Below are positions 1 through 61,314 of a DNA stretch of 64,000 nucleotides, in pieces; the stretch's first letter is position 1, and every line of letters starts with the position of its first letter. The notes beneath the pieces are model-generated. The model did not search any database, had not been told where the DNA came from, and was given only the letters and a program-made list of their open reading frames with translations. The position numbers were made by a program, and so were the translations under genes. The stretch covers positions 1 to 64,000 of IMG/VR virus record IMGVR_UViG_3300042868_005134, one strand, 5' to 3'.

Positions 1-77
1 ATGCCGAACTTGCCGTCAGTAATGGCAGCAAATGCATTTGAGCATACTAACAATAAGGCTAATAATATCTTTTTCAT
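1..77 (-). CDS. Secreted protein, N-terminus only (runs off window); next gene of the curli operon
   Basis: Not in ORF track. ATG at 77 overlaps the FecR-gene stop (ATGA). Reads MKKILLALLLVCSNAFA-AITDGKFG, a Sec signal peptide. Confidence 0.75.
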   Translation of the reverse strand, partial: MKKILLALLLVCSNAFAAITDGKFG

Positions 78-1246
78 CTGAAATTCTGATTGATAACAAT
101 CTGCCCCACTGCTTTACCGCTGCTAAAGTTCCAGCTGTTAGTCTGCATGTCCTGTGTAACAACGACCTGCACCTGTGTATTGATAGGCATAACCACATTG
201 GCATAGTTTCTACTATTAGGGCTTAAACTTTCATACTGCCAACCAACCTGTTGTGTTTCGCTCTTGTCTTTCCACAATTTCTTAACATAGGGATTTTCAG
301 TGTCACTGACTGCGGCTACATCATTAACTAGTGCATCTTTATTTCCAGCTGTATCTAGTCCAATCTTGGTTCTATTCTCAGGATCTTCGTCACCCTCATT
401 GGCACTACGACCCTGCTTTGCCGAACGAGCACCACCGCCTTCTTTGTTGGCAGCTTGTTGTCGTTCTTCTTTAGCATCATCCTTGTCTTCTTTATCTTCT
501 TTCTTGTCTTTGTTATCTGACTTTTTAGCATCGCCTGTGGCCACTGCGGCAGCACGAGCAGCAGCAATAACATTTAGGCCGGTAGTTGTTCGTGGCGGAT
601 TAACCATTAAATTGTTGCCAATGGCCATACCGTTAAGAGCAACGACAACAGCAGGGCTAGGCATGCCATTTAGTGTTTCGACTAAAGTAGCTTGATAAGG
701 ACGATTCAACTTAACGATACCTGCTGGTGTTTCCACATCAATAGCACCACTGCCACAGGTAAGACCTTTAAGGTTTACATTTTGTTCTATTTCACAACGT
801 GGCATCAGCATGATCATGCTGGCGCCGGTTTCGCTCACAGCCATGACAAAGTCAGTGCCACGAACAGCAATGGCCGCTGTGGGTGTGTTGATTTTTACGT
901 TCTTGGGATCTTTGGCTATACTGCCTGACACATAACGAACTGTTCCTGCGGCTGCTTTAAGCCCTAACTTACCCGCGCCGCTTTTAGGATCATATACAAA
1001 ATCGTCAATAACAAGGCTACTGGACTCAGTAACAGTAACATTTGTATCGTCTTTAAAAACAATCTTAACCTTACCGTTCTTGGTTTCAATCTTGTCATTA
1101 ACTTCAATTACTGTGCCTTTGGCAATCTGGATTGTATCCTTGCCGCGCTTGATAATGGCAGTACCGGACGATTCAGTGACCGACCCAATATTTGCCCATG
1201 TAGAGCATGTTATTAATAAGCCGACAGCAAGGATGGCAATTTTCAT
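74..1246 (-). CDS. FecR-domain secreted protein
   Basis: Signal peptide, then FecR-like segment (DKIETKNGKVKIVFKDDTNVTVTESSSLVID...KINTPTAAIAVRGTDF); charged low-complexity linker. Confidence 0.8.
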   Translation of the reverse strand: MKIAILAVGLLITCSTWANIGSVTESSGTAIIKRGKDTIQIAKGTVIEVNDKIETKNGKVKIVFKDDTNVTVTESSSLVIDDFVYDPKSGAGKLGLKAAAGTVRYVSGSIAKDPKNVKINTPTAAIAVRGTDFVMAVSETGASMIMLMPRCEIEQNVNLKGLTCGSGAIDVETPAGIVKLNRPYQATLVETLNGMPSPAVVVALNGMAIGNNLMVNPPRTTTGLNVIAAARAAAVATGDAKKSDNKDKKEDKEDKDDAKEERQQAANKEGGGARSAKQGRSANEGDEDPENRTKIGLDTAGNKDALVNDVAAVSDTENPYVKKLWKDKSETQQVGWQYESLSPNSRNYANVVMPINTQVQVVVTQDMQTNSWNFSSGKAVGQIVINQNFR

Positions 1247-1255
1247 TGCCAGTCC

Positions 1256-2044
1256 TTAGTTCTTCTGTGTTATATTGAACATGCCACTGTTGGACACACT
1301 CTTGATGTTGATAACGCTGTCAATAGTACCAGTTTGACTCAAGGTAAAAGTATTGCTGTTGCCTGTTAAGTCCACCCAAATACTAGAACCAGCGGCACCT
1401 GTTGAGCGTTGGTTGATATCAAATGTATTAGTGTCACCTACCACTTTGATAGTTTGGCTATGCTTGTTACCAATAGCATCGATACGGAATATATTACTGT
1501 CGCCTGTGACATCAACTGCGCTCTTTAGATCATCGCCAGTACCACGGAATTGGAAATCGTTACTGTCGCCAGTGAACTTCCAATTGAAGTCAGCAGCCTT
1601 ACATCCCGATAATGCTGTAGTACCATCGCTGGCATTCCCGTAACCGCAGGCAGCATCAACTCTATTGTTGTCACCAATTTGCTGAATAGTGATGTTAACA
1701 CCTTGTCCAGTTCCGGTGGTGTTGTTTACCGCTTCTAAACTGATTTCATTGTTAACACCAATTTGACGAGTAACGATGGTTTGGTCAATACCACGTAGGT
1801 ATATAGGGCGGCCGCCACTGCCAGCAGCATTGCCTGTGCCGTCTTGTGTCATATTGACATTAGGGTTGTCACCGCTTTGGTCGATAAAAATTTTGTTGGT
1901 TGTAGCAATGGCCAATGCAGCTGTTGCGTTGGGACTAACTGTGACCATGTTTGGAATCACAGGCGCACTTGGTGCTGACACAGCGGTCTGGGCCATTACT
2001 GGAAATGCCGCTGCTAATAATATTGTTATAATTGTTTTTTTCAT
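1256..2044 (-). CDS. Curlin-like (CsgA/CsgB-type) amyloid repeat protein
   Basis: Signal peptide; repeated Q/T-x-G-x-x-N units (IDQSGDN, TQDGTGN, RQIGVNN, QQIGDNN, FTGDSN, VTGDSN, VVGDTN, LTGNSN); adjacent to csgG/csgF. Confidence 0.75.
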   Translation of the reverse strand: MKKTIITILLAAAFPVMAQTAVSAPSAPVIPNMVTVSPNATAALAIATTNKIFIDQSGDNPNVNMTQDGTGNAAGSGGRPIYLRGIDQTIVTRQIGVNNEISLEAVNNTTGTGQGVNITIQQIGDNNRVDAACGYGNASDGTTALSGCKAADFNWKFTGDSNDFQFRGTGDDLKSAVDVTGDSNIFRIDAIGNKHSQTIKVVGDTNTFDINQRSTGAAGSSIWVDLTGNSNTFTLSQTGTIDSVINIKSVSNSGMFNITQKN

Positions 2045-2072
2045 TATATTCTCCTAACCTTGTGGGTTATTT

Positions 2073-3026
2073 TTATTTTGTTGATGTGATTGGGTTTCCG
2101 TTGCCATCAACTGCGTTTGTTGTAACTTGGTTTGATCCCACAGTTTTTCCGCTATCGGACTGCTGTGGTGCGGGTGTAGCTTTGGTTGTGTCCTGGGCCT
2201 TGGTTTGTGTTTGAACCAACTCATTAGGTTTCTCCTTGAATTTCCACAAGCCGTTGCGTTCGCCTTTATTAATCAACTCGATAACTGCTGTTTCAATAGC
2301 TGAACGAAGAGCATAGTTACCTGGTTCGTTGAATGTTTGGCTAGAGTCAAACTCAAATGCTTGAGTAGCTTGGTTGAAAAACTTCAACGCTGTGGCGCCA
2401 TCGGCGGTGCTGAGCAAGTTCTTCTCCACTGTTACTGTGGTTAAGACTTCGCCAGTTTGAACACTGACTAGACGTAAACTGATAACAACCACGTCCTGTG
2501 TGTAGGCAGTCTGTGCTCCGATACCAAATATTCTAGCACCTGTTCCGCCTGTTAGTGTGTTGCTGTTGTAGTCAATGATGCCGCCTTCTAGTATAACGCC
2601 GGCCATCTGTAATGGAGGTAGCATTTTAGCGTTAGCACCGTCATAGATTTCACGAGTCTGTTTAATCATCTGACGCTCTTTTAACAAGTTGTCAAGGCCA
2701 ACACGTTCAACAACTGTGAACCATTGACGATTGCCAACTTCTTGTAAACTTTTCATTAGGTATGCTTCTGCACCCTGTGTAACTGCTGTAGAGAACAAGC
2801 TGAGTGTTGAACTTGGTTTACGCTGTCCTGTTAGGTCTTTAAATCCATACACTGCTACTGTTACTGCTGGGCCTGCTGGTGCGGGCACATTGGCAAAACT
2901 CTTGTTGATAGTGTTTGAAACTGTGGCTTCTTCTTTGATTTTTGTGTTACCCAATGGGCGTACTGTTGAGCAGCCTGCTAGAGCTACTACGGCTAGTGTG
3001 ATTAAGGATAGTTTGATTGCGTTCAT
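2073..3026 (-). CDS. csgG: Curli secretion channel lipoprotein CsgG
   Basis: Lipobox LAGC; VAVYGFKDLTGQRKP, STAVTQGA, WFTVVERVGLDNLLKERQMI, ILEGGIIDY, LRLVSVQTGEVL. Confidence 0.92.
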   Translation of the reverse strand: MNAIKLSLITLAVVALAGCSTVRPLGNTKIKEEATVSNTINKSFANVPAPAGPAVTVAVYGFKDLTGQRKPSSTLSLFSTAVTQGAEAYLMKSLQEVGNRQWFTVVERVGLDNLLKERQMIKQTREIYDGANAKMLPPLQMAGVILEGGIIDYNSNTLTGGTGARIFGIGAQTAYTQDVVVISLRLVSVQTGEVLTTVTVEKNLLSTADGATALKFFNQATQAFEFDSSQTFNEPGNYALRSAIETAVIELINKGERNGLWKFKEKPNELVQTQTKAQDTTKATPAPQQSDSGKTVGSNQVTTNAVDGNGNPITSTK

Positions 3027-3035
3027 ATGTTCTCC

Positions 3036-3515
3036 TTAAAAACTAAAACTGGCAATTGGAACTACTACTGTAGTCACTGTGCCTTTGGCATCCACCACTG
3101 TTAGTGTGACTTTGTCATTGGCTTTTGCCCAAGTAACTGTATTACCATCTAGGGCAAAAGTTCCAGTTGTTGGATTGACACAACCAGGAATTGCTGTGCC
3201 ATCTGCGGCACTACATTTGTTTGTGAATAGGTTGTTGCTTAACTGTGTGGCCAGTTGAGCATATATTTGACTTTGAAACAGACTCATAAATCTATTCAAA
3301 GGAGTGTTTAGCAGTTCTGCTTCTGCTTTGGCAATGGCAGCTTTTTTGTCTGCTTCGATAGCGTCTTTACGTGACTTTTCAATACTGTCAATCGTCAAGA
3401 CGTGGCTGCTGAATCCAATGCCGCTAAAGGCTGGATTTTTAAATTGTTGTACTAGCTCTGCTTGCGACACTGTCGCAATCGCACTTAGACTTAGTGATAC
3501 TAAGATTTTTTTCAT
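3036..3515 (-). CDS. csgF: Curli assembly factor CsgF
   Basis: Signal peptide followed by ELVQQFKNPAFSG (cf. CsgF FQFRNPNFGG); immediately upstream of csgG. Confidence 0.8.
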   Translation of the reverse strand: MKKILVSLSLSAIATVSQAELVQQFKNPAFSGIGFSSHVLTIDSIEKSRKDAIEADKKAAIAKAEAELLNTPLNRFMSLFQSQIYAQLATQLSNNLFTNKCSAADGTAIPGCVNPTTGTFALDGNTVTWAKANDKVTLTVVDAKGTVTTVVVPIASFSF

Positions 3516-3538
3516 CGGTTCGCTCCCGGTTACAAAAG

Positions 3539-3544
3539 TATTTA
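3539..3544 (-). promoter_or_regulatory. TAAATA late-promoter-like motif upstream of curli operon
   Basis: Core of the T4-type late promoter TATAAATA; same motif recurs in about 20 intergenic positions. Confidence 0.55.
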
Positions 3545-3575
3545 ACCGAAAGCTGCGATAGATTAAACTCTACTA

Positions 3576-3947
3576 TTAAAGGATAATTAAAATGTATGCC
3601 ATTGCCATATAGCATACTTGATGGGCTAGTTGATCTAGGCCAAACTGGTTCCAAAACAATGGTTTAGTATTGTCCTTACAACCGTATTTTACTTTTGTGT
3701 AATCGATTGTGTAATGTAGTATACCTTCTACGAACACGATAGGAATGATTAACTGAGCATTAATTGGAAATAATATTGCGAAAACCAGTAAGGCAACCAA
3801 CGAGCACCAGATATGATCCATAGTATGACTTATGCCGATCGGGTCTAACCACACGCCTTTTTTGATAGTTTGCATGTAGGTTTGAATCTTAAAATCAGCG
3901 TACCAGTGCTTGATTTGTAGCAGGGTTAAAAGTGCTAGTATTTCCAT
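3576..3947 (-). CDS. DUF3307-like membrane protein
   Basis: KHWYADFKIQT, H..IDYTK and FGLDQLAHQ motifs; hydrophobic helices. Confidence 0.7.
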   Translation of the reverse strand: MEILALLTLLQIKHWYADFKIQTYMQTIKKGVWLDPIGISHTMDHIWCSLVALLVFAILFPINAQLIIPIVFVEGILHYTIDYTKVKYGCKDNTKPLFWNQFGLDQLAHQVCYMAMAYILIIL

Positions 3948-4000
3948 GTGTTTTTATTTATTAAAACACAGAGGGAGATTTTAGTAAAAAAGGCCAGTTA

Positions 4001-5791
4001 TTAGCTCGAAATTATACTAGCGTTATAGGATGGTGTTGGAGTTTGTTGGGCATCGTTCCAGTTGAATCCACTTGTGATTACAACTGTACCGTTTTGGATT
4101 TTATCTAAGAAATCTGTAGGATCGCCACCTGATCCACGCATAATTGTATAATCTAGTGTAGTAGTGTTTAAAAACATAATATTTTCAACACCGTCTTCTA
4201 AATGGTAACTTACGAAAGAAATAGCAGTTACAGCTTTGTTCATTTCTTCAAAATTAACAGACTTACCGTTCCTAGCAATAGCTTTTCCTATCATACCTTC
4301 TGGAGAATCTATACCTAGTTCTTCCATGTGCTGTTTAACAGCGCCCCAGTTGTTTACAATAGACTTCATCGTGTTAAGAAACAAACCAACTGTTTCTGCA
4401 CGTGTGCTGTGCGGTAGTACTTCGTTGTTTAACGCATCGAAGCCTTTCTTATTCCAGTTATACTTTGACGCAGTTTTACCCGATGAAAGGTTAACCATGT
4501 TCGAACTGTACTGTTTAGACTTAACCGAAACAGGATTGCCTTTTTTATCTGTATTTTGGAATGTAGCAGTGGGAGGAGCGTTCTTTTGTATAAGTTCATC
4601 GATAACTTGACTCCAGATTTTCCAACCTGTTGTTGCTTTACCAATGCCCTTACTATTCAAACGGCCACCGTTCTTTTTACCTGCTTTAATCTCATACATC
4701 TCGCCATTGATTTCCAAGTCGCCGTGCGTTTCGGCTTTTCTAGTTGGGCTACCCATCATAGAAAGAGCCATTTCACCAGGACCTACAGCGCCGGATGTTG
4801 TACCTGGACTGTATTCAAAGATATTGTTTTCAGGTCTTGTAAACAAGTCGAACACATCAGCCCATTGGCCATTTAATGCGTCGCGGATGTTTCCGCGATC
4901 TTGTCCAACTACTGCTGTCATGTCGATAACTTTCTTATCAACACATGCTTTTAAGAAGTTTTTAATTTGATCAGGTGTTACGCTTGTTTCACGCTTGTTA
5001 GCCATTTCAATGATTAAGCCAAACAATGCTTGTCTTAGTGTACTAGTAAACTGCTGTGCGTTAACGATTTTTTTCTTTTGTGCAGCTTTTAACGAGCTAG
5101 TATCGATGCTATCGATAGTTTCACTATAGCCTTGTACACGATCACCTAATACTGTTAAGTAGCCAGCAATGTCTTTTAAGAACTTGTCGGCTTCTTCTTT
5201 TTGCTTCTTGTATAAGTCACGCTCTTCGACTGCCGCTTTAAAGCCTTTAAAAGTAGCTGTAGCACTTTCTAACTGTTGATTAGCAAACTGTAATCCGCGA
5301 TCACGTAATTGTGTTTCTTTTGGTGTTTCGGGCTCAACTGATTCTAAGTAACGAATTTCTTCTTTGATAGTTTCTAAGTTGGCTTTGGCTGCTTCTAACT
5401 GATCTGGAAAATGATATTCGCGTCTTCTGTTATATTTTACACCTTCTGTTACAGGCGCTTCTGGAGCAATCGGTGACACTGCTTGGGCAGGTTGTACTGA
5501 AGCAGGCACTGGTTGTACTGGGGCAGGAGCAGGCACTGGGGCAGGAGCAGGCGCTGGAGCAGACTGAGCCAGAGTAGACTTTGCCCTAAAGTATTCTGTA
5601 AACTTGCCAATACCATCAATAATCTTTTCTAGCGTATCGTTAAATTTAACTAGTCGCTGTCCGTCTTCTTCGGGTATTTTGTCAGTTACTGAAGTTAACA
5701 AGTTTACAGTATGTAAAGCATTGTTTGCTGTTAGTCGAGGGTCTGCGGCAGCTTCGTAAAGGTTGGTGATTTTAAATTCGCGAAATCTCAT
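4001..5791 (-). CDS. Large hypothetical protein with coiled coil and putative PD-(D/E)xK nuclease-like domain
   Basis: N-term MRFREF..LYE; Pro/Ala linker; GPGEMAL...HGDLEINGEMYEIKAG resembles E...D-x(n)-ExK. Confidence 0.5.
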   Translation of the reverse strand: MRFREFKITNLYEAAADPRLTANNALHTVNLLTSVTDKIPEEDGQRLVKFNDTLEKIIDGIGKFTEYFRAKSTLAQSAPAPAPAPVPAPAPVQPVPASVQPAQAVSPIAPEAPVTEGVKYNRRREYHFPDQLEAAKANLETIKEEIRYLESVEPETPKETQLRDRGLQFANQQLESATATFKGFKAAVEERDLYKKQKEEADKFLKDIAGYLTVLGDRVQGYSETIDSIDTSSLKAAQKKKIVNAQQFTSTLRQALFGLIIEMANKRETSVTPDQIKNFLKACVDKKVIDMTAVVGQDRGNIRDALNGQWADVFDLFTRPENNIFEYSPGTTSGAVGPGEMALSMMGSPTRKAETHGDLEINGEMYEIKAGKKNGGRLNSKGIGKATTGWKIWSQVIDELIQKNAPPTATFQNTDKKGNPVSVKSKQYSSNMVNLSSGKTASKYNWNKKGFDALNNEVLPHSTRAETVGLFLNTMKSIVNNWGAVKQHMEELGIDSPEGMIGKAIARNGKSVNFEEMNKAVTAISFVSYHLEDGVENIMFLNTTTLDYTIMRGSGGDPTDFLDKIQNGTVVITSGFNWNDAQQTPTPSYNASIISS

Positions 5792-5801
5792 AGTTTAATA
5801 T

Positions 5802-6482
5802 TTAGCGAATTTCAGGGAACAAGCAGTCCTGAATGAACACTTTTACATCTTCTTCGTTTAGCCCTAGACTAGCCATAACTTTAGGAGTATGCGGATTCTG
5901 CTTTTGATTCTGTGCGTAGAAGTTCTGTGCGTCTTTAGTGCTTTCCACAGTATTATTAGTTTCTGACACAGTGGCAAGGTAATGATTTAAATTCTTACGT
6001 GCCATGGCAAGAATCTGAGTTAGCTCTTCGCCTTCGCTTACATTGCCTGCTGCCACCATGTGTTTGGTAAAAATACGTTGTGCCCAATCGGGTAATGGGC
6101 GTGGCTTGTTCCATTCTAGCTTGCTAGATTCATGTTCGAACCAGTCAATCATAGGATGGGCTGGATCTCCGGCGGGACTGAAATCATGAAAACAACCGGT
6201 AATTTTATTCTTACCTGCTACTACATCAAAGCCAAATATTGGTGCTGGATTGTGTAAGTGCGGAAACACACAGCAATGCATCATCCAAAGACCCCGAGTG
6301 TCTCTAGCATCTACTATGTCAATGTGCGCTCTACGGTAACTGTCGCTTTCCCACACCAAGTTAACCCACCCTGGTTTGTTAAAACGATCCATATTTTTTT
6401 CATGTAATAACCAGCCGCTGTTGTGAAAGGCTATTTCGAAATATTCTTGTACATCTACAAGTGTGTTCCAAACTTGACTCAT
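5802..6482 (-). CDS. pcyX: Ferredoxin-dependent bilin reductase, PcyA/PcyX type
   Basis: RRAHIDIVD, WMMHCCVFP, PIFGFDVVAG, RPLPDWA, QKQNPHT. Asp at the PcyA Glu76 position suggests PcyX. Start revised to 6482 (ATGA overlap with heme oxygenase stop). Confidence 0.8.
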   Translation of the reverse strand: MSQVWNTLVDVQEYFEIAFHNSGWLLHEKNMDRFNKPGWVNLVWESDSYRRAHIDIVDARDTRGLWMMHCCVFPHLHNPAPIFGFDVVAGKNKITGCFHDFSPAGDPAHPMIDWFEHESSKLEWNKPRPLPDWAQRIFTKHMVAAGNVSEGEELTQILAMARKNLNHYLATVSETNNTVESTKDAQNFYAQNQKQNPHTPKVMASLGLNEEDVKVFIQDCLFPEIR

Positions 6483-7018
6483 AATTCTGTGTTCAACGCT
6501 TTCATCAGTTTGATAGCCCACTCGAAAGCCACTCGAGCTTCATCGCCCAGGTCATCTGTGAGTTCTGCTCTAATTGCTGCCTTAAGAGCTTCTGAATCTT
6601 TAAACTGATAAAATCTGCCTTGTCCTGGAACTTTTTTAGCAATTATTTGTCCGCCAAACAAATCGCCCATGTGTCTACAGTACAGGTGAGCCTTGACTAG
6701 ATGTTTACGATCACTGTAGTTGAGTGCTAGTAAATATTGATAGTAATCAATAGTTGCGGGCAACCATTTAAGTTGATGGTTGGGTCCGACTAGTTCAATA
6801 CAATCTTGATAAATTTTATGTGCTCGTTCAATGTCGGGTAAGTTTTTTAACATACCCTGGCTATTTGCAGCTACCTCAATGCCGTTATAAACAAGTGTCA
6901 TTTGCCAAAGATAATTGGCGTATTCTTCTGTTGAAATACTGCCTGTAACTAATTTTTTGGCAAACAGCGTTCGTTCTGCGTCCGTGTGTAAATCTTTTGT
7001 TATGTCTCGTAAGCTCAT
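6479..7018 (-). CDS. hemO: Heme oxygenase
   Basis: LRDITKDLHTDAE (proximal His) and AHLYCRHMGDLFGGQII signature. Confidence 0.9.
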   Translation of the reverse strand: MSLRDITKDLHTDAERTLFAKKLVTGSISTEEYANYLWQMTLVYNGIEVAANSQGMLKNLPDIERAHKIYQDCIELVGPNHQLKWLPATIDYYQYLLALNYSDRKHLVKAHLYCRHMGDLFGGQIIAKKVPGQGRFYQFKDSEALKAAIRAELTDDLGDEARVAFEWAIKLMKALNTEL

Positions 7019-7317
7019 TCTTCCTCCATCTTTATTTGAAGCGGAAAACCGTTGCTTCTTGCGAGTTGTGTTGACTCTACTGCTTTTGCTTCAGCAATTT
7101 CAAAACTGTACACACCAGCAACGCCGCTGCCTGTATTATGTACCTCTATTGTGATTCCTTTAGCAGTTTCCTGAGTGTGCTTGAAGATATCTGTAAGTAT
7201 ACCCACAACAAAATCCATGGGTGTTGTTTCGTCATTTAGTAGTAATACTTTCCAACGTTTAGGTTCATGAATTTTCTGTTTGATTTTTTCATCAATTTGA
7301 ATTTCGGTAGTTGACAT
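7015..7317 (-). CDS. clpS: ATP-dependent Clp protease adaptor ClpS
   Basis: WKVLLLNDETTPMDFVV, EVHNTGSGVAGVYSFEIAEAK, GFPLQ; start revised to MSTTE after GGAG. Confidence 0.92.
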   Translation of the reverse strand: MSTTEIQIDEKIKQKIHEPKRWKVLLLNDETTPMDFVVGILTDIFKHTQETAKGITIEVHNTGSGVAGVYSFEIAEAKAVESTQLARSNGFPLQIKMEEE

Positions 7318-7362
7318 AATATTCTCCAAAAGTGGGAGAGAACAACTCCCCCGGTTTTATAT

Positions 7363-7788
7363 TTACTTGATTTCGATTCTACGAGGCTTAAGAGCTTCTG
7401 GTACAAGACGGTGTATGTCAATTTGTAACATACCGTGTTCTACTTTGGCGCCGCGAACTTCCATATACTCAGCAAGAGTAAATGTCTGTTCAAAGTCACG
7501 AGCTGCCAATCCACGATGTAAGTACTCAACTCCAGCATCTGCGTTGGGTCGATTTTTAATACCACGAATTGTTAATTGGTCCTGATCCACTTCTACAGTA
7601 ACTTCTTCTTTATTGAAGCCTGCCACTGCAACTTCAATAGCATACGTATCGTCGCTATATTTTACAATATTGTGCGGAGGATAGTTACCATTTTGGTGAT
7701 GTGTCGCACTGAAGTAGCGATCAAATCCTACTAGTGCTCTACTTAGTTGGGCAAGGTCTGCCGCGTTGATAGTTCTTAGCTGTGTCAT
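7363..7788 (-). CDS. Small heat-shock protein (Hsp20/IbpA family)
   Basis: NYPPHNIVK, IEVAVAGF, EYLHRGLAARDF, GMLQIDI, KPRRIEIK. Confidence 0.93.
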   Translation of the reverse strand: MTQLRTINAADLAQLSRALVGFDRYFSATHHQNGNYPPHNIVKYSDDTYAIEVAVAGFNKEEVTVEVDQDQLTIRGIKNRPNADAGVEYLHRGLAARDFEQTFTLAEYMEVRGAKVEHGMLQIDIHRLVPEALKPRRIEIK

Positions 7789-7843
7789 AATAATCTCCTT
7801 TGATAAGCAAGAATGAATGAGGGCCTTGTTATAAGCGCCCTCG
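7789..7843 (-). promoter_or_regulatory. ROSE-like RNA thermometer in hsp20 5' UTR
   Basis: 5' hairpin GAGGGC...GCCCUC, then UCUUGCUU-AUCA-AAGGAGA hairpin occluding the SD with a bulged G. Confidence 0.75.
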
Positions 7844-7854
7844 TTTGGTTTTAA

Positions 7855-9750
7855 TTAAGCCTTGTCTTTGACTTCGGTAAACTCTGCGTCTACAATGTTG
7901 TCATCGTTGGGCTTGGGTTGGCTGTCAGCTTGTTCAGCTTTGGCCTTGGCTTCCATTACTGGCATGCCCGCAGTGAATAAATCGCTTGTGGCCTTTTGAA
8001 TGGCTTCAGCGTCATCACCTTGTTTAGCATCCTCTACAGCTTTAATAGCATCTTCGATAGCAGTCTTCTGCTCGTTGGTCAACGAGCTTTCAACTTCTTT
8101 CATATCAGTGCGTAGGCTGTGTACAGATGCTTCCGCTTGGTTACGTGCCTCAATGAGTCCACGTTGTTTCTTGTCAGCTTCAGCGTTAACTTCTGCTTCC
8201 TGAACCATGCGTTCGATTTCTTCCTTGGTAAGTCCACTATCACTCTTGATAGTGATTTTGTTTTCCTTGCCTGTGTTCTTGTCCTTGGCGCTGACATGCA
8301 TGATACCGTTGGCGTCGATGTCGATAGTGACTTCAATTTGCGGTTGTCCTCTACGGCTAGGAGCGATGCCTTCTAGGTTGAACTCACCTAACATTTTATT
8401 GTATTGGAACAGTTCACGTTCACCCTGTGCTACCTTGATAGTAACAGCTGGTTGATTGTCTTCTGCTGTACTGAATGTTTGACTAGCTTTGGTTGGAATA
8501 GTTGTGTTCTTGTTAATCAACTTGGTAAACACGCCACCCATTGTTTCAATACCCAAGCTCAATGGCGTAACGTCTAACAATAACACGTCAGTGCGGTCGC
8601 CTGCTAGTACACTGCCTTGAATGGCTGCGCCTGCGGCAACTGCTTCGTCTGGGTTAACATCACGACGTGGTGCTTTGCCAAACAGTTTCTCAACTGTTTC
8701 TTGTACCTTAGGCATACGTGTCATACCACCAACAAGAATAACTTCATCAATGTCAGAGGCTGTGACGCCTGCGTCACTCATAGCTATCTTACATGGCTTA
8801 ACACTACGCTCGATGAGTTCTTCAACTAGACTTTCTAGTTTAGCACGATTGATCATGATGTTCATGTGCATCGGGCCGCCGGCATTGGCAGTAATGTATG
8901 GAAGATTAACAGCCGTTTGTTGTGTGCTAGACAATTCAATCTTGGCTTTTTCAGCTGACTCTTTCAAACGCTGTAATGCCAACACATCAGTCTTAAGATC
9001 CACACCTGTATCTTTCTTGAACTCGTCAACAAGGAAGTCCATGATACGTTGGTCGAAGTCTTCACCGCCTAGGAATGTATCGCCGTTAGTGCTTAATACT
9101 TCGATCTGTTTGTCGCCATCTACTTCCGCAATCTCAATGATTGATACATCGAATGTACCGCCACCAAGGTCGTAAACAGCAATTTTCCTATCTTTTTTAT
9201 CAGACTTATCAACACCATAACTAAGAGCTGCCGCAGTAGGCTCGTTGATAATACGCAGTACTTCCAAGCCTGCGATTCGGCCAGCATCTTTAGTTGCCTG
9301 ACGTTGACTGTCGTTAAAGTACGCAGGAACTGTGATAACGGCTTGAGTAACTTCATGTCCTAAATAGTCCTCGGCTGTCTTCTTCATCTTGCGAAGAACT
9401 TCAGCACTAATTTGTGGAGGTGCAAGTTGCTCTCCATTTGCTTCGACCCAAGCATCGCCATTGGCTGCTTCTGTAATCTTATAAGGCATAAGCCCTATGT
9501 CTTTTTGTACTGCTTCTTCTTTGAACTTTCGTCCAATGAGACGCTTGGCAGCATAAATTGTGTTTTTGGGGTTTGTAACTGCTTGACGCTTTGCGCTTGC
9601 GCCTACTAGAATTTCATTGTTAGCATAAGCAACAATACTTGGTGTAGTACGTGCGCCTTCGCTATTTTCAATTACTTTTGTAACACCGTTTTCAATAACG
9701 GCTACGCATGAATTTGTGGTACCTAAATCGATACCGATGACTTTGCTCAT
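7855..9750 (-). CDS. dnaK: Chaperone DnaK (Hsp70)
   Basis: [39 protein letters not shown]-terminal DAEFTEVKD. Confidence 0.98.
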
Positions 9751-9806
9751 AATTTTCTCCTTATATTAAGCAAGAATTTGTAGACCCTCGCGGCGTTCTA
9801 CAAATT
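9751..9806 (-). promoter_or_regulatory. ROSE-like RNA thermometer in dnaK 5' UTR
   Basis: AAUUUGUAGA...UCUACAAAUU hairpin, then UUCUUGCUUA-AUA-UAAGGAGAA SD-occluding hairpin; TAAATA at 9807-9812 just upstream. Confidence 0.7.
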
Positions 9807-9814
9807 TATTTATC

Positions 9815-10099
9815 TCAGATATTCTCTAAATTAAAGATATTGGACCATTTTTTTAGCTTGTCTATTTTAGCTAATTTTGCGGATTCTAAACTGTCTAAGT
9901 CCACAATCTGCATATCCACTAAAATGTCAATCATAGCCAATAAATCGCCAAGTTCTTCTTCTAAGTGTTGGCAATTAGTTTTAGGCTTGCCTGGCTTTAA
10001 ATTATCCAGTCCAAATCTATGACACTTGCTAACTGCTTGAATTACTTCCGCACATTCTTCTGAAAGAATGTTCATTGCTTCGCGTTCACGTTCGTTCAT
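9815..10099 (-). CDS. MazG-like nucleotide pyrophosphohydrolase
   Basis: LSEECAEVIQAVSK...LEEELGDLL acidic metal-binding motifs. Confidence 0.8.
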   Translation of the reverse strand: MNEREREAMNILSEECAEVIQAVSKCHRFGLDNLKPGKPKTNCQHLEEELGDLLAMIDILVDMQIVDLDSLESAKLAKIDKLKKWSNIFNLENI

Positions 10100-10101
10100 A
10101 A

Positions 10102-10686
10102 TTACCTTTGATTTGCAAATGGTGAAATCATTTTACCGTTGTACATTGTACTGCCGCGTAATTTTTGAAATATGTGTTGTACACCAACTGCTTGATTCCA
10201 AGCATCCTCTAGTGCGTGATGTTTTAGTACTGGTGGACGTTCTGGATCAATACCCAAGTCGAACAATGTGCGAGTATCGCGTACTTCCCAGAAACTCCAA
10301 GGAATTGCCCTGCCCACTTTTCTAAAAATGTGCTCGCACATCACAACGTCAAATGCGGACCCATGACTCCAAACACGTTTTGCGCCCCAACAAAATTTAT
10401 ACAGTTGAGCCATTGCTTCCACAATGTCAATTCTATCCGCTGGGTCGAATGCTTCGTCTTGTGCTTCTTTACTTTGCTGTGCCCACCAAGCAATAGTGTC
10501 GTCGTTGGTAACTAGCCCAATCCTATCGCAACTATCAAGGTCAACTCTACAGTAAAATTTTACACATTTAGGATCTGACAATTCGTCTCCAAACGGATCA
10601 AATTTTACTGCGCCTATTGTGAGAATGGAAGCATCTGGAGTAGTTGCCAATGTCTCTAAGTCAATCATAATGTCTGTTAGTGCCAT
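10102..10686 (-). CDS. DEDDh 3'-5' exonuclease (Rv2179c/ExoVIII-like)
   Basis: IMIDLETL, WSHGSAFD, RDTRT, HHALEDA. Confidence 0.85.
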   Translation of the reverse strand: MALTDIMIDLETLATTPDASILTIGAVKFDPFGDELSDPKCVKFYCRVDLDSCDRIGLVTNDDTIAWWAQQSKEAQDEAFDPADRIDIVEAMAQLYKFCWGAKRVWSHGSAFDVVMCEHIFRKVGRAIPWSFWEVRDTRTLFDLGIDPERPPVLKHHALEDAWNQAVGVQHIFQKLRGSTMYNGKMISPFANQR

Positions 10687-10712
10687 AAGTTCTTTCTTTA
10701 AAAGTAACTTAC

Positions 10713-10742
10713 ATTATAACAGACACTGTGCTGAAATGTCAA
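10713..10742 (-). promoter_or_regulatory. Sigma70-type promoter
   Basis: TTGACA-18 nt-TATAAT with TG extension, upstream of the exonuclease gene. Confidence 0.65.
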
Positions 10743-10981
10743 TACATTTTCTTAGGTAATTCTTGTTCTCTGAGCTTCTTGGCCCAACGACTTTTGGCTG
10801 CGGCAGCTTTGCGCTTGCGAGCAGTCGTTGGCTTTTCGTAGAACTCTTTCTTTTGAAGATCTTTTAGCTTGCCGCTATCTTCAATTTTATTTTTGAACTT
10901 TCTTAAAGCACGGCCGACATCGTCGCCATCTTTAAGAAACACTGTCGAGCCATATAATTTTACCACGTTATTTTCCTTCAT
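10739..10981 (-). CDS. rpsU: Phage-encoded ribosomal protein bS21
   Basis: DDVGRALRKFKNKIEDSGKLKDLQKKEFYEKPTTARKRKAAAAKSR; start revised to MKENN after GAGG. Confidence 0.9.
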   Translation of the reverse strand: MKENNVVKLYGSTVFLKDGDDVGRALRKFKNKIEDSGKLKDLQKKEFYEKPTTARKRKAAAAKSRWAKKLREQELPKKMY

Positions 10982-11396
10982 TGTCTTCCTCTTCTGAGTC
11001 TTCCTCGTCTTCTCCATTGGATTCTAAAATTTCCAATATCCAATCTAAATTATAGATTCTATTTCTACTAATTAAATTCCAGGGTGTTATTTCATCGCTG
11101 GTCATATAATAAGAATTGGGTTGCGCCAACATAAAGCTAACGAAGCTTTTTGTTATTTCGTCGCAGTTGTCAACATCAATGATAACAAAGTCTGCGTGTT
11201 GACTAGCATTTAACATCCAAGCAATGTCCGCTTCTTCTGTATCATAAACATACACATTGATATCATCGTCTACGGCACTTAACAAAGTTTGAAATTGCAT
11301 CTTCAACTTGGTGCTGGGTTTTACCAACAAGTAACCGGGGTTCAAATTAAATAAATTATCCGGCGGTGTTATTAGATTGATTTTTCCTAAGTTCAT
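10968..11396 (-). CDS. Hypothetical protein with acidic tail
   Basis: 142-aa ORF in operon context. Confidence 0.7.
   Translation of the reverse strand: MNLGKINLITPPDNLFNLNPGYLLVKPSTKLKMQFQTLLSAVDDDINVYVYDTEEADIAWMLNASQHADFVIIDVDNCDEITKSFVSFMLAQPNSYYMTSDEITPWNLISRNRIYNLDWILEILESNGEDEEDSEEEDNEGK

Positions 11397-53625: not shown

Positions 53626-61314
<7,689 letters not shown>

What the first reader, a model, noticed from the sequence alone, without database searches (positions are those of the whole stretch)
1..3544. Phage-encoded curli (type VIII secretion) operon with curlin subunit and FecR-like partner
Seen: csgF, csgG, a curlin-repeat protein, a FecR-domain protein and another signal-peptide protein form one tightly spaced run behind a TAAATA late-type motif. 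Known: CsgG/CsgF build the outer-membrane pore that exports amyloid curlin, and curli genes have been noted in aquatic myophages without a demonstrated function. Inference: the infected cell may secrete a phage amyloid (aggregation, grazing protection, superinfection block), or use the pore for uptake or lysis. No CsgE, CsgC or CsgD is visible, and FecR is not part of the enterobacterial system.
Basis: partly seen in the sequence, partly recalled or inferred. Interest (0 to 1): 0.72.

Follow-up and report, generated by a model that had tools for sequence, protein, structure and literature searches.

The report
Curli secretion module in jumbo phage
A roughly 381-kb lake-water phage carries a full set of genes for exporting curli-type amyloid fibres, joined to a membrane sensor that makes cyclic AMP; this gene set is already known from marine phages, so this is a new carrier and not a new system.

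Summary
Window 3515..74 (minus strand) encodes CsgF, the lipoprotein CsgG, a 262-aa curlin-repeat protein (CurA) and a secreted FecR-domain protein. All have signal peptides, the genes are 9-28 nt apart, and a TAAATA motif lies upstream.

The "fifth protein" is the first 25 codons of a 611-aa second curlin. The window starts at a contig end. Other assemblies show that the genome closes there into one eight-gene module:
- CsgF, CsgG, CurA and FecR;
- Cur2, a lectin-like domain joined to curlin repeats;
- a CHASE2 class III cyclase;
- two small membrane paralogs.

The contig's last 2.77 kb is an 82%-identical alternative allele, not a second copy.

The same module is published for marine pelagiphages (HTVC008M, Melnitz, HTVC023P-type), including FecR and the cyclase. 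Three things are new:
- The carrier is a freshwater jumbo myophage lineage (53 related IMG/VR contigs).
- FecR is the usual bacterial neighbour of CHASE2 sensors (16 of 19 CHASE2 genes in five alphaproteobacterial genomes). It is not an iron regulator.
- The segment from CsgG's 3' half to FecR circulates as deeply diverged alleles under purifying selection.

The function remains inferred.

The parts
3955..3960 (-). TAAATA promoter-like motif (AATAAATA) 13 nt before the DUF3307 start
   Evidence: the motif is 10-fold enriched upstream of ORFs genome-wide and also precedes tail-fibre genes
3576..3947 (-). DUF3307 membrane protein (123 aa), a conserved upstream neighbour of csgF in the lake lineage
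   Evidence: Pfam DUF3307 E 4e-9 and phrog_2470. It lies directly before csgF in about 50 related IMG/VR loci. It is not seen in that position in Melnitz or HTVC008M.
3539..3544 (-). TAAATA motif (TTAAATA) 29 nt before csgF
3036..3515 (-). csgF (159 aa; signal peptide; mature N-terminus ELVQQFKNPAFSG)
   Evidence: Pfam CsgF 46 bits over its full length. A family profile's only PDB hits are E. coli CsgF, aligning QFRNPNFGGN with QQFKNPAFSG, though weakly (E 0.63).
2073..3026 (-). csgG (317 aa; lipobox LAGC; variable, low-complexity C-terminal tail from about residue 267)
   Evidence: Pfam CsgG 173 bits. E 8e-46 to E. coli CsgG; the constriction loop reads KPSSTLSLF where E. coli has KPYPASNF. 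The lipobox is kept in all 46 relatives.
1256..2044 (-). curA: secreted curlin-repeat beta-solenoid protein (262 aa)
   Evidence: x-G-x-x-N/Q repeats; profile hit to CsgA 8c50 at 1.4e-7; AF2 pLDDT 80; VIA Z 19.2 to 8c50 and 15.1 to E. coli CsgA
74..1246 (-). FecR-domain secreted protein (390 aa): signal peptide, FecR fold at residues 20-205, disordered charged linker at 241-312, conserved beta-rich C-terminal domain at 320-390
   Evidence: Pfam FecR 40 bits. AF2 model and VIA Z 14.3 to PupR 6ovm. The signal peptide is the only hydrophobic segment.
1..77 (-). First 25 codons of cur2 (611 aa in all). The gene continues at G000 380638..378880, followed by the CHASE2 cyclase (G000 378871..376808) and two small phrog_18771 membrane paralogs (G000 375889-376263 and 376439-376807, plus strand).
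   Evidence: Window 1-118 is identical to G000 380639-380756. L084 and other assemblies run straight from window 1 into G000 380638. Cur2 has an F5/8 type C domain, and residues 341-608 are homologous to CurA (hhalign 98.7%). The cyclase has CHASE2 (E 4e-35) and Guanylate_cyc (E 8e-15). The small paralogs lie next to the module in all 27 loci that reach far enough.

Best explanation
This is a self-contained, phage-borne type VIII secretion (curli) module of the alphaproteobacterial gene order csgF-csgG-curlin, joined to a FecR-domain/CHASE2 adenylate cyclase sensor pair.

Proposed mechanism:
- The genes are transcribed from TAAATA (T4-late-like) promoters.
- All six products enter the periplasm or membrane by Sec.
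- The lipoprotein CsgG forms the outer-membrane channel.
- CsgF plugs its conserved N-terminus (FKNPAFSG) into that channel and presents its C-terminal part at the cell surface.
- The two curlin paralogs leave unfolded through the pore and stack into beta-solenoid fibres on the infected cell. These are CurA (262 aa) and Cur2 (611 aa, an N-terminal F5/8 type C lectin-like part plus a curlin solenoid).
- The secreted FecR-domain protein takes the periplasmic accessory place that CsgE holds in E. coli. It couples the envelope or secretion state to the inner-membrane CHASE2 cyclase.
- The cyclase's cAMP acts on host receptors.

Shown here: gene content, order, homology, folds, signal peptides, conservation under purifying selection, and the bacterial FecR-CHASE2 pairing.

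Inferred: export, fibre formation, FecR-CHASE2 contact, the nucleotide made, and the benefit to the phage. The likeliest benefit is surface remodelling that sticks cells together or shields the infected cell.
For: - Domains and folds.
- Single contiguous operon: gaps of 9-28 nt, with overlaps. It was proven across the contig end by independent assemblies.
- Conservation across phages: the same eight genes, six of them in the same order, occur in Melnitz, HTVC008M, three MAG-binned phage contigs and 53 IMG/VR relatives.
- Purifying selection: dN/dS is 0.05-0.07 between the two alleles, with dS about 1.
- Co-variation across loci: CsgF and CurA divergence track each other (rho 0.83). FecR tracks CsgG best (rho 0.92). 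The cyclase is partly uncoupled (rho 0.41-0.43).
- Bacterial comparison:
  - Five alphaproteobacterial T8SS loci share the csgF-csgG-curlin order.
  - In five alphaproteobacterial genomes, 16 of 19 CHASE2 genes have a Pfam FecR hit within 7 kb, and 17 of 25 FecR hits lie by a CHASE2 gene.
  - Campylobacterota CHASE2 cyclases cluster with FecR-domain and TPR proteins (PMC9239204).
  - S. meliloti CHASE2 cyclases turn an extracellular protein cue into cAMP through an outer-membrane protein (PMC13001267).
- Cyclase residues: the metal-binding Asp residues, Lys470/Asp547 (the adenylate type) and Arg558 are kept.
- Transcription: freshwater metatranscriptome contigs 90-99% alike cover fecR, curA, csgG, csgF and DUF3307.
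Against: - No experiment shows secretion, amyloid or cAMP for any phage module. Buchholz et al. saw no clumping of Melnitz-infected cells.
- CsgE and CsgC are absent.
- The constriction loop differs from E. coli.
- Cur2's 340-residue lectin-like part would have to pass a pore about 1 nm wide unfolded.
- The transition-state Asn of the cyclase is Ser in this sub-lineage.
- The phage encodes no cNMP-binding protein.
- Four related loci have FecR but no cyclase within about 6 kb. Published podophage modules often lack the cyclase too. FecR may therefore serve the secretion system alone.
- The RNA runs may contain DNA, and they had no valid silent control.
Confidence: 0.5

Rival explanations
1. 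Pore only. CsgG-CsgF is re-purposed as a gated outer-membrane channel for lysis timing (pinholin- or secretin-like) or for uptake of nutrients and cofactors. The curlin-like proteins are accessory and do not form fibres.
For: This was proposed for Melnitz and the pelagimyophages. CsgE, the E. coli gate, is missing. The constriction residues have changed. Two small single-pass membrane proteins always accompany the module, and their nearest named look-alikes are the holin-like families YvrJ and Holin_BhlA, though only at scores of 0.83-0.85, below the level to trust.
Against: An outer-membrane pore cannot depolarise the inner membrane. Two curlin paralogs are kept in every lineage under dN/dS of about 0.07, and CurA co-varies with CsgF, the fibre-anchoring partner in E. 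coli. CurA's best sequence and structure matches are true CsgA fibres.
Confidence: 0.2
2. Signalling module first. The FecR/CHASE2 cyclase is the core, and the secreted curlin and lectin proteins are its ligands or an antenna. The module senses neighbours, lysis products or superinfection, and reprograms the host through cAMP.
For: FecR-CHASE2 is a widespread bacterial sensing pair. In S. meliloti such cyclases respond to an extracellular protein through an outer-membrane protein. The cyclase has its own TAAATA motif.
Against: The cyclase is the least tightly linked part. It is missing near some modules and is separated by inserted genes in many loci. The phage has no cNMP receptor. The catalytic Asn is replaced by Ser here.
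Confidence: 0.15
3. The phage carries two tandem copies of the module, as the raw contig suggests: window 1-2813 and G000 380639-383411.
For: The two stretches are 82% identical, both are intact and under purifying selection. Two assemblies of about 383 kb end the same way.
Against: A 235,945-nt NCBI contig and three JGI contigs carry the exact window sequence running on into Cur2-cyclase-TctA with a single module. All 53 relatives have one copy. In the source-like runs, the module region breaks into short contigs with summed depth up to 64, against 9.6 for the flank. That pattern is typical of co-existing alleles.
Confidence: 0.03
4. Inert cargo: a horizontally acquired bacterial operon with no role in infection.
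For: No phenotype is known. The deep CsgG tree does not resolve the origin.
Against: The module is kept in at least three phage lineages and in thousands of metagenomic homologues, with dN/dS of about 0.05. It has phage-type promoter motifs and transcript-like contigs.
Confidence: 0.02

Closest known systems
Pelagiphage T8SS/curli modules (Pelagibacter phage HTVC008M, Methylophilales phage Melnitz, HTVC023P-type podophages; PMC7029224, PMC9004378, PMC9599517)
   Same: The six genes are in the same order: CsgF-CsgG-curlin-FecR-second curlin-CHASE2 cyclase. The same pair of small phrog_18771 membrane proteins lies alongside. CsgE and CsgC are lacking in both.
   Different: The proteins are only 25-48% identical. 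The carrier is a roughly 381-kb freshwater jumbo myophage whose capsid protein is nearest the Rak2/PA5oct/Phosso group, not a 140-kb marine Kyanoviridae phage or a podophage. The small paralogs sit beyond the cyclase on the other strand. A DUF3307 gene precedes csgF. No histidine kinase was seen. Cur2 carries an F5/8 type C domain. The published freshwater fonsimyophages lack the operon.
Alphaproteobacterial curli operons (csgF-csgG-curlin repeat genes)
   Same: The order csgF, csgG, then curlin-repeat genes is shared. The CsgG proteins score 223-278 bits against the phage profile.
   Different: None of five bacterial T8SS loci has FecR or CHASE2 within 8 kb. None of 40 CHASE2 loci has T8SS genes. 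The fusion of the two systems was seen only on phage contigs in this sampling.
E. coli/Salmonella csgBAC-csgDEFG curli system
   Same: It has the CsgG nonamer-type lipoprotein, CsgF with the N-terminal FxNPxFxG motif, and Q/N/G-rich curlin repeats forming a beta-solenoid.
   Different: CsgE and CsgC are absent, and CsgD was not looked for. CsgG scores 174 bits against an equivalog cut-off of 505. The curlins are longer, with about 8-9 rungs, a Cys-bearing insert and, in Cur2, a lectin-like domain. The constriction loop is altered.
FecR-domain protein with CHASE2 receptor pairs (Campylobacterota cAMP clusters; Burkholderia LysM-FecR/CHASE2 kinase operon; S. meliloti CyaD1/D2/K pathway)
   Same: An extracytoplasmic FecR-domain protein is encoded beside a CHASE2 membrane sensor with a cytoplasmic output domain.
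   Different: Here one curlin gene separates the pair, and the pair is embedded in a secretion operon on a virus. No TPR protein, phosphodiesterase or cNMP receptor was found.

Membership tests
Type VIII secretion (curli) system | CsgG-family outer-membrane lipoprotein channel | tested here: met
   Pfam CsgG 173 bits against a cut-off of 20.8. E 8e-46 to solved E. coli CsgG. Lipobox L-A/V-G-C in all relatives.
Type VIII secretion (curli) system | Orthology to enterobacterial CsgG (NCBIfam equivalog PRK15184) | tested here: not met
   173.6 bits against a cut-off of 505. It is a member of the family but not the E. coli orthologue.
Type VIII secretion (curli) system | CsgF with an N-terminal CsgG-binding segment | tested here: met
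   Pfam CsgF 46 bits against 25.8, over the full length. The F-K-N/D-P-x-F-S/N-G motif is invariant or nearly so in 23 sequences and aligns with E. coli QFRNPNFGGN (weak E 0.63).
Type VIII secretion (curli) system | Secreted curlin-repeat subunit with a beta-solenoid fold | tested here: met
   Curlin_rpt 21.6 bits against 20.7, which is marginal. Profile to CsgA 8c50 at E 1.4e-7. AF2 pLDDT 80. VIA Z 19.2 to 8c50 and 15.1 to 8enq. Foldseek alone found nothing significant.
Type VIII secretion (curli) system | A distinct nucleator (CsgB) beside the major subunit (CsgA) | tested here: inconclusive
   Two curlin paralogs exist: CurA, and Cur2 residues 341-608 (hhalign 98.7%). Which of them nucleates, if either, cannot be told from sequence.
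Type VIII secretion (curli) system | CsgE periplasmic gate and CsgC chaperone | tested here: not met
   No Pfam CsgE or Tafi-CsgC match anywhere in the 383-kb record. The E. coli control was positive.
Type VIII secretion (curli) system | Export through CsgG and amyloid polymerisation | not testable with these tools
   Needs expression, Congo red/ThT assays and electron microscopy.
FecR-type anti-sigma factor (FecIRA cell-surface signalling) | Periplasmic FecR-domain fold | tested here: met
   Pfam FecR 40.3 bits against 24. VIA Z 14.3 to PupR 6ovm and 12.9 to 4m0h; the next hit is at 7.1.
FecR-type anti-sigma factor (FecIRA cell-surface signalling) | N-terminal cytoplasmic anti-sigma domain and a transmembrane helix | tested here: not met
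   The FecR domain starts right after a cleavable signal peptide (residues 1-19). There is no other hydrophobic segment.
FecR-type anti-sigma factor (FecIRA cell-surface signalling) | A cognate ECF sigma factor | tested here: not met
   No Sigma70_r2 match in the phage record. 10 of 14 control genomes were positive.
FecR-domain / CHASE2 receptor pair | A CHASE2 membrane sensor with an output domain encoded beside a FecR-domain protein | tested here: met
   CHASE2 E 4e-35 plus Guanylate_cyc E 8e-15, with transmembrane segments flanking CHASE2. The gene lies one gene from fecR in the closed locus. In five alphaproteobacterial genomes, 16 of 19 CHASE2 genes have a FecR hit within 7 kb.
FecR-domain / CHASE2 receptor pair | Physical contact between the FecR-domain protein and the CHASE2 domain | not testable with these tools
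   No usable result from computation; needs a two-hybrid or pull-down experiment.
Class III adenylate cyclase | Catalytic residues: two metal-binding Asp, the substrate Lys/Asp pair, and the transition-state Asn and Arg | tested here: inconclusive
   D428, D474, K470, D547 and R558 are kept. The Asn is Ser554 in this sub-lineage, but Asn in sister phage lineages and in a bacterial homologue.

The most novel reading that the evidence does not exclude
The phage module is a 'sense-and-build' surface organelle that exists only as a viral fusion. The FecR-domain protein replaces CsgE as the periplasmic adaptor of the CsgG pore, and it also reports secretion or extracellular protein cues to the CHASE2 cyclase. 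In this way cAMP ties the infected cell's physiology (and possibly lysis timing, through the two linked small membrane proteins) to the assembly of lectin-tipped amyloid fibres that capture neighbouring cells or block other phages. The deeply diverged alleles of the segment from CsgG's 3' half to FecR, which swap on identical backbones, would then reflect matching between pore, adaptor and fibre.
Probability: 0.12. Interest if true: 0.75.

Novelty: new member of a known kind. Interest (0 to 1): 0.4.

Why it matters
Phage-encoded curli systems are widespread in the sea but have no demonstrated function. This locus adds four things.
- The same eight-gene module is also common in lakes, on jumbo phages from a different lineage. 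Selection for it is therefore not tied to SAR11/OM43 hosts or to small genomes.
- Recognising FecR plus the CHASE2 cyclase as a standard bacterial sensing pair replaces the 'iron regulator' reading. It gives concrete, testable partners: FecR with CHASE2, and FecR with CsgG.
- The module has complete, short genes with signal peptides, so it is a convenient set for heterologous expression.
- A practical caution: the record's two ends are alternative alleles of one locus, and the real genome is about 2.8 kb shorter than the contig.

Tried and rejected
- **DNA search against isolated phages.** blastn of window 1-6600 against 50,697 phage records found no match. Only protein-level hits to Melnitz and HTVC008M were found.
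- **Foldseek on the CurA model.** Nothing in PDB was significant (best E 0.03, generic beta-helices). The CsgA match came only from VIA-align.
- **FecR C-terminal domain as a curlin repeat.** This was suggested by its ending VVVTQD...IVINQ. hhalign against the CurA family gave probability 0.6%, so the idea was dropped. Its fold found only weak Ig-like matches (Z about 3.3).
- **Complex prediction of CHASE2 (residues 30-310) with mature FecR.** No answer (score 0.00, controls not run). This is not evidence either way.
- **Tandem duplication of the module.** Rejected by independent assemblies.
- **Bacterial counterpart of the whole fused module.**
  - A genome-contig scan with the FecR alignment gave three full modules, all on phage-like contigs binned into MAGs.
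  - The true bacterial FecR relatives had CHASE2 cyclases, Slam/TPR or TolC-like neighbours, but never CsgG.
  - My viral FecR HMM under-detects bacterial FecR genes. It found them at 15 of 40 CHASE2 loci, whereas Pfam's model found them at 16 of 19.
- **CsgG tree.** The lake lineage forms one clade (93/99), but its relation to the marine phage clades and to alphaproteobacteria is unresolved.
- **PADLOC.** The only hit is generic cyclase likeness to PycC, 43 bits.
- **Sigma-70 promoter and terminator scans.** Not above chance.
- **ESM Atlas for the small membrane protein.** It returned viral-only unnamed clusters. The named look-alikes (YvrJ 0.85, Holin_BhlA 0.83) are below the level to trust.
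- **FecR homologue search.** It was saturated by more than 3,000 close metagenomic relatives and gave no bacterial context.

Full report
**What is there**

On the minus strand of window 1-3947 lies a tight run of genes:
- DUF3307, 3947..3576
- csgF, 3515..3036
- csgG, 3026..2073
- a 262-aa curlin-like gene, here called curA, 2044..1256
- a 390-aa FecR-domain gene, 1246..74
- from position 77, the start of a further gene that runs off the window

The Pfam, PHROG and NCBIfam scans support the names:
- CsgF: E 7.5e-12.
- CsgG: E 6e-51.
- FecR: E 4e-10.
- Curlin_rpt: only just above its cut-off (21.6 bits against 20.7).
- NCBIfam CsgB: E 1.5e-5.

Every product begins with a signal peptide, and CsgG has a lipobox (LAGC).

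**Is the 262-aa protein a curlin?**

I aligned 26-28 homologues from related viral contigs. The alignment shows a repeated x-G-x-x-N/Q motif with a period of about 22 residues. Searched against all PDB sequences, the profile has two curli subunits as its top hits: Pontibacter korlensis CsgA 8c50 (E 1.4e-7) and E. coli CsgA 8enq (E 0.035).

AlphaFold2 gives a stack of 17 beta strands over residues 50-262 (pLDDT 80, pTM 0.76). Foldseek found nothing significant. An exhaustive VIA-align search of 48,161 chains put 8c50 first (Z 19.2, 205 residues, 22% identity) and E. coli CsgA fifth (Z 15.1, covering 109 of its 111 residues); the other hits were generic beta-helices. I therefore accept it as a curlin-type beta-solenoid.

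**CsgG and CsgF details**

CsgG aligns with solved E. coli CsgG at E 8e-46. Its constriction loop reads KPSSTLSLF where E. coli has KPYPASNF, so the Phe is kept while the Tyr and Asn are changed. A variable, low-complexity tail follows residue 267 or so.

The mature CsgF N-terminus, ELVQQFKNPAFSG, is nearly invariant in 23 phage sequences. The family profile's only PDB hits are E. coli CsgF. They align this segment to QFRNPNFGGN, the part that sits inside the CsgG barrel in the solved complex, but the match is weak (E 0.63).

**The window begins at a contig end, and the module goes on**

The window is bases 1-64000 of a 383,411-bp IMG/VR record. The record's last 2,773 bases (380639-383411) match window 1-2813 at 82% identity, and the first 118 bases are identical.

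Upstream of that copy lie three features:
- a 611-aa signal-peptide protein (378880-380715);
- a 687-aa CHASE2 plus class III cyclase protein (376808-378871);
- on the other strand, two small ORFs.

Exact-protein look-ups settle the structure. A 235,945-nt NCBI contig and several JGI contigs carry the window's own FecR in one uninterrupted array. The array runs DnaK, HSP20, ClpS, heme oxygenase, bilin reductase, p596, DUF3307, CsgF, CsgG, CurA, FecR, the 611-aa protein, the CHASE2 cyclase, the small ORFs, and then TctA. That contig is 100% identical to window 11246..1 and then runs on into G000 380638 and downward.

Three conclusions follow:
- The genome map closes at about 380.6 kb.
- The module is single-copy.
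- The contig's terminal 2.77 kb is an alternative allele of the stretch from fecR through curA into the 3' part of csgG.

A second assembly of 383,229 bp ends the same way. The two alleles differ mostly at synonymous sites (dS about 1, dN/dS 0.05-0.07), so both are functional and old.

In two lake-water runs, the region 1-3450 is broken into contigs of 130-1,200 nt. Their summed depth reaches 64, against 9.6-11.4 for the long contig that starts at about 3,450-3,500. That is the signature of several co-existing variants.

**The rest of the module**

The 611-aa protein, here called Cur2, has an F5/8 type C (discoidin-like) match at residues 191-265. Its residues 341-608 are homologous to CurA (hhalign probability 98.7%, E 2e-16). 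It is thus a second curlin with a lectin-like head.

The cyclase has an N-terminal membrane helix, a periplasmic CHASE2 domain, further membrane helices and a Guanylate_cyc domain. The two metal-binding Asp residues, Lys470/Asp547 (the adenylate-type pair) and Arg558 are conserved. The transition-state Asn is Ser in this sub-lineage, though it is Asn in sister phage lineages and in a bacterial homologue.

The two small ORFs are paralogs (both phrog_18771). At least the first carries one hydrophobic helix. They lie beside the module in all 27 loci that extend far enough. In Melnitz and HTVC008M they sit before csgF; in the lake lineage they sit beyond the cyclase on the other strand.

**Relatives**

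tblastn of CsgG against 50,697 isolated-phage records finds only Melnitz (four records), HTVC008M (two records) and one fragment. Their annotated loci show the same order: CsgF-CsgG-curlin-FecR-curlin-cyclase.

In IMG/VR, 53 contigs of up to 326 kb carry CsgG proteins 65-93% identical, always with one contiguous module. Divergence within the module is uneven. Some loci keep a cyclase about 80% identical alongside a CsgF about 41% and a CurA about 35% identical. CsgF and CurA co-vary (rho 0.83) and FecR tracks CsgG (rho 0.92). This is descriptive only, because the loci are related to one another.

More than 3,000 FecR homologues turned up in metagenomes, and the best 120 were at least 90% identical.

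The phage itself has a T4-type capsid protein. It is 69-72% identical to those of Phosso, PA5oct, Rak2-like and other jumbo myophages. The runs that hold the sequence are labelled lake water.

**What FecR is doing here**

The protein is not a FecIRA anti-sigma factor:
- Its FecR domain follows a cleaved signal peptide directly, with no membrane helix.
- The phage has no ECF sigma factor.

Its model has three parts:
- a confident FecR fold (residues 20-205; Z 14.3 to the PupR periplasmic signalling domain);
- a disordered charged linker;
- a conserved beta-rich C-terminal domain of unknown kin.

In bacteria, FecR-domain genes are the habitual neighbours of CHASE2 sensors:
- In a sample of 121 alphaproteobacterial genomes, 52 have CHASE2.
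- Of the 40 best CHASE2 loci, 39 are CHASE2-cyclase fusions.
- In five of those genomes, 16 of 19 CHASE2 genes have a Pfam FecR hit within 7 kb, and 17 of 25 FecR hits lie beside a CHASE2 gene.

The literature agrees:
- Campylobacterota CHASE2 cyclases cluster with a FecR-domain outer-membrane protein, a TPR protein and a phosphodiesterase (PMC9239204).
- Burkholderia has a LysM-FecR/CHASE2 kinase operon (PMC5192318).
- S. meliloti CHASE2 cyclases answer an extracellular protein through an outer-membrane protein (PMC13001267).

Conversely, none of the 40 CHASE2 loci has T8SS genes. None of five genuine alphaproteobacterial csgF-csgG-curlin loci has FecR or CHASE2 within 8 kb. In this sampling, the fusion of the two systems was seen only on phage contigs. 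That includes three contigs binned into MAGs whose flanks are phage-like.

FecR is more tightly tied to the secretion genes than the cyclase is. It is present in every module that reaches that far, whereas four loci lack a cyclase within about 6 kb. It may therefore also serve the pore, perhaps in the place of the missing CsgE.

**Expression signals**

TAAATA is the most over-represented hexamer in the 60 nt before ORF starts. It occurs 80 times against 8 expected, mostly 10-40 nt upstream, and usually as (A/G)ATAAATA(T/C). It precedes two tail-fibre genes, DUF3307, csgF (a weaker TTAAATA form), p596 and the cyclase. This fits a T4-late-like promoter, but the timing is not shown.

Contigs from two freshwater metatranscriptomes, 90-99% alike, cover fecR, curA, csgG, csgF and DUF3307. 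The tool warns that DNA may be present in such runs. The only uncovered stretch, p596, is strain-specific, so it is not a valid control.

**Comparison with what is known, and novelty**

The phage curli module, including FecR, the second curlin and the cyclase, is published:
- HTVC008M annotation.
- Zaragoza-Solas 2020, PMC7029224.
- Buchholz 2022, PMC9004378.
- Wittmers 2022, PMC9599517.
- A T4-like Bacteroidetes virus, PMC7198788.

None of the three main papers mentions CHASE2, and Wittmers et al. read FecR as an iron regulator. I found no paper that links curli genes to jumbo or freshwater phages. The published freshwater fonsimyophages lack the operon.

The finding is therefore a new member of a known kind: a new phage lineage and a new habitat, with a sharper reading of two of its parts. 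It is not a new system.

**Verdict**

The best-supported mechanism is a complete minimal curli secretion and fibre system wired to a FecR/CHASE2 cyclase sensor. Export, amyloid formation, the FecR contacts and the benefit to the phage all remain to be tested.

Noticed in passing
window 1-2813 and G000 380639-383411 (L004, L005): The record's two ends are 82%-identical versions of the same locus, with the first 118 nt identical. Independent assemblies show a single copy, so the true genome map is about 380.6 kb and the contig walked into an alternative allele. dS is about 1 and dN/dS 0.05-0.07 between the alleles.
   Followed up: yes
G000 375889-376263 and 376439-376807 (L005 9890-10264, 10440-10808, plus strand): Two paralogous small proteins (phrog_18771, no Pfam family) lie next to the curli module in every locus that reaches far enough, including Melnitz and HTVC008M, although their position and strand differ. 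The first has one hydrophobic helix; no such segment was detected in the second. The nearest named look-alikes (YvrJ, Holin_BhlA) score below the level to trust.
   Followed up: partly
window 3576-3947 (-): A DUF3307 membrane protein with its own AATAAATA motif sits directly before csgF in about 50 related lake contigs, but not in the marine phages.
   Followed up: partly
whole genome; examples at window 3539-3544, 3955-3960 and 5799-5804: TAAATA, usually (A/G)ATAAATA(T/C), is 10-fold enriched in the 60 nt before ORF starts (78 of 395 ORFs) and precedes tail-fibre genes. It is probably this phage's late-type promoter. The full T4 octamer TATAAATA is not enriched.
   Followed up: partly
window 5802-7018 (-): A heme oxygenase and a ferredoxin-dependent bilin reductase are adjacent. 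This pigment-pathway pair is known from marine phages and is here in a lake jumbo phage.
   Followed up: no
window 7015-10981 (-): A run of host-like proteostasis and translation genes: ClpS, HSP20, DnaK (631 aa, about 66% identical to bacterial DnaK), MazG-like, an Rv2179c-like exonuclease and ribosomal protein S21.
   Followed up: no
window 4001-5791 (-): A 596-aa protein with a Pro/Ala-rich stretch and no family match. It is found only in the closest strains, and no metatranscriptome contigs lay on it.
   Followed up: no
G000 376808-378871 (L005 10809-12872, minus strand): The cyclase of this sub-lineage has Ser in place of the transition-state Asn (GDSVSLTAR against GDAVNLASR in sister lineages and a bacterial homologue). 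All other catalytic residues are kept.
   Followed up: partly
window 2073-2230 (-), csgG 3' end: The C-terminal tail of CsgG (after about residue 267) is low-complexity. It varies in length (268-371 aa total) and in sequence among relatives, and it is the most diverged stretch between the two alleles (about 55% identity, with indels).
   Followed up: partly
window 53626-61314 (-): A 2,562-aa ORF beside the tail-fibre genes coincides with a strong negative GC skew (-0.36 at 54-56 kb).
   Followed up: no
G000 371407-373945 (L005 5408-7946, minus strand): A TctA tricarboxylate-transporter membrane subunit (E 7e-91) lies beside a weak TctC-like receptor (E 0.005, below the Pfam cut-off), a few kb from the curli module.
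   Followed up: no
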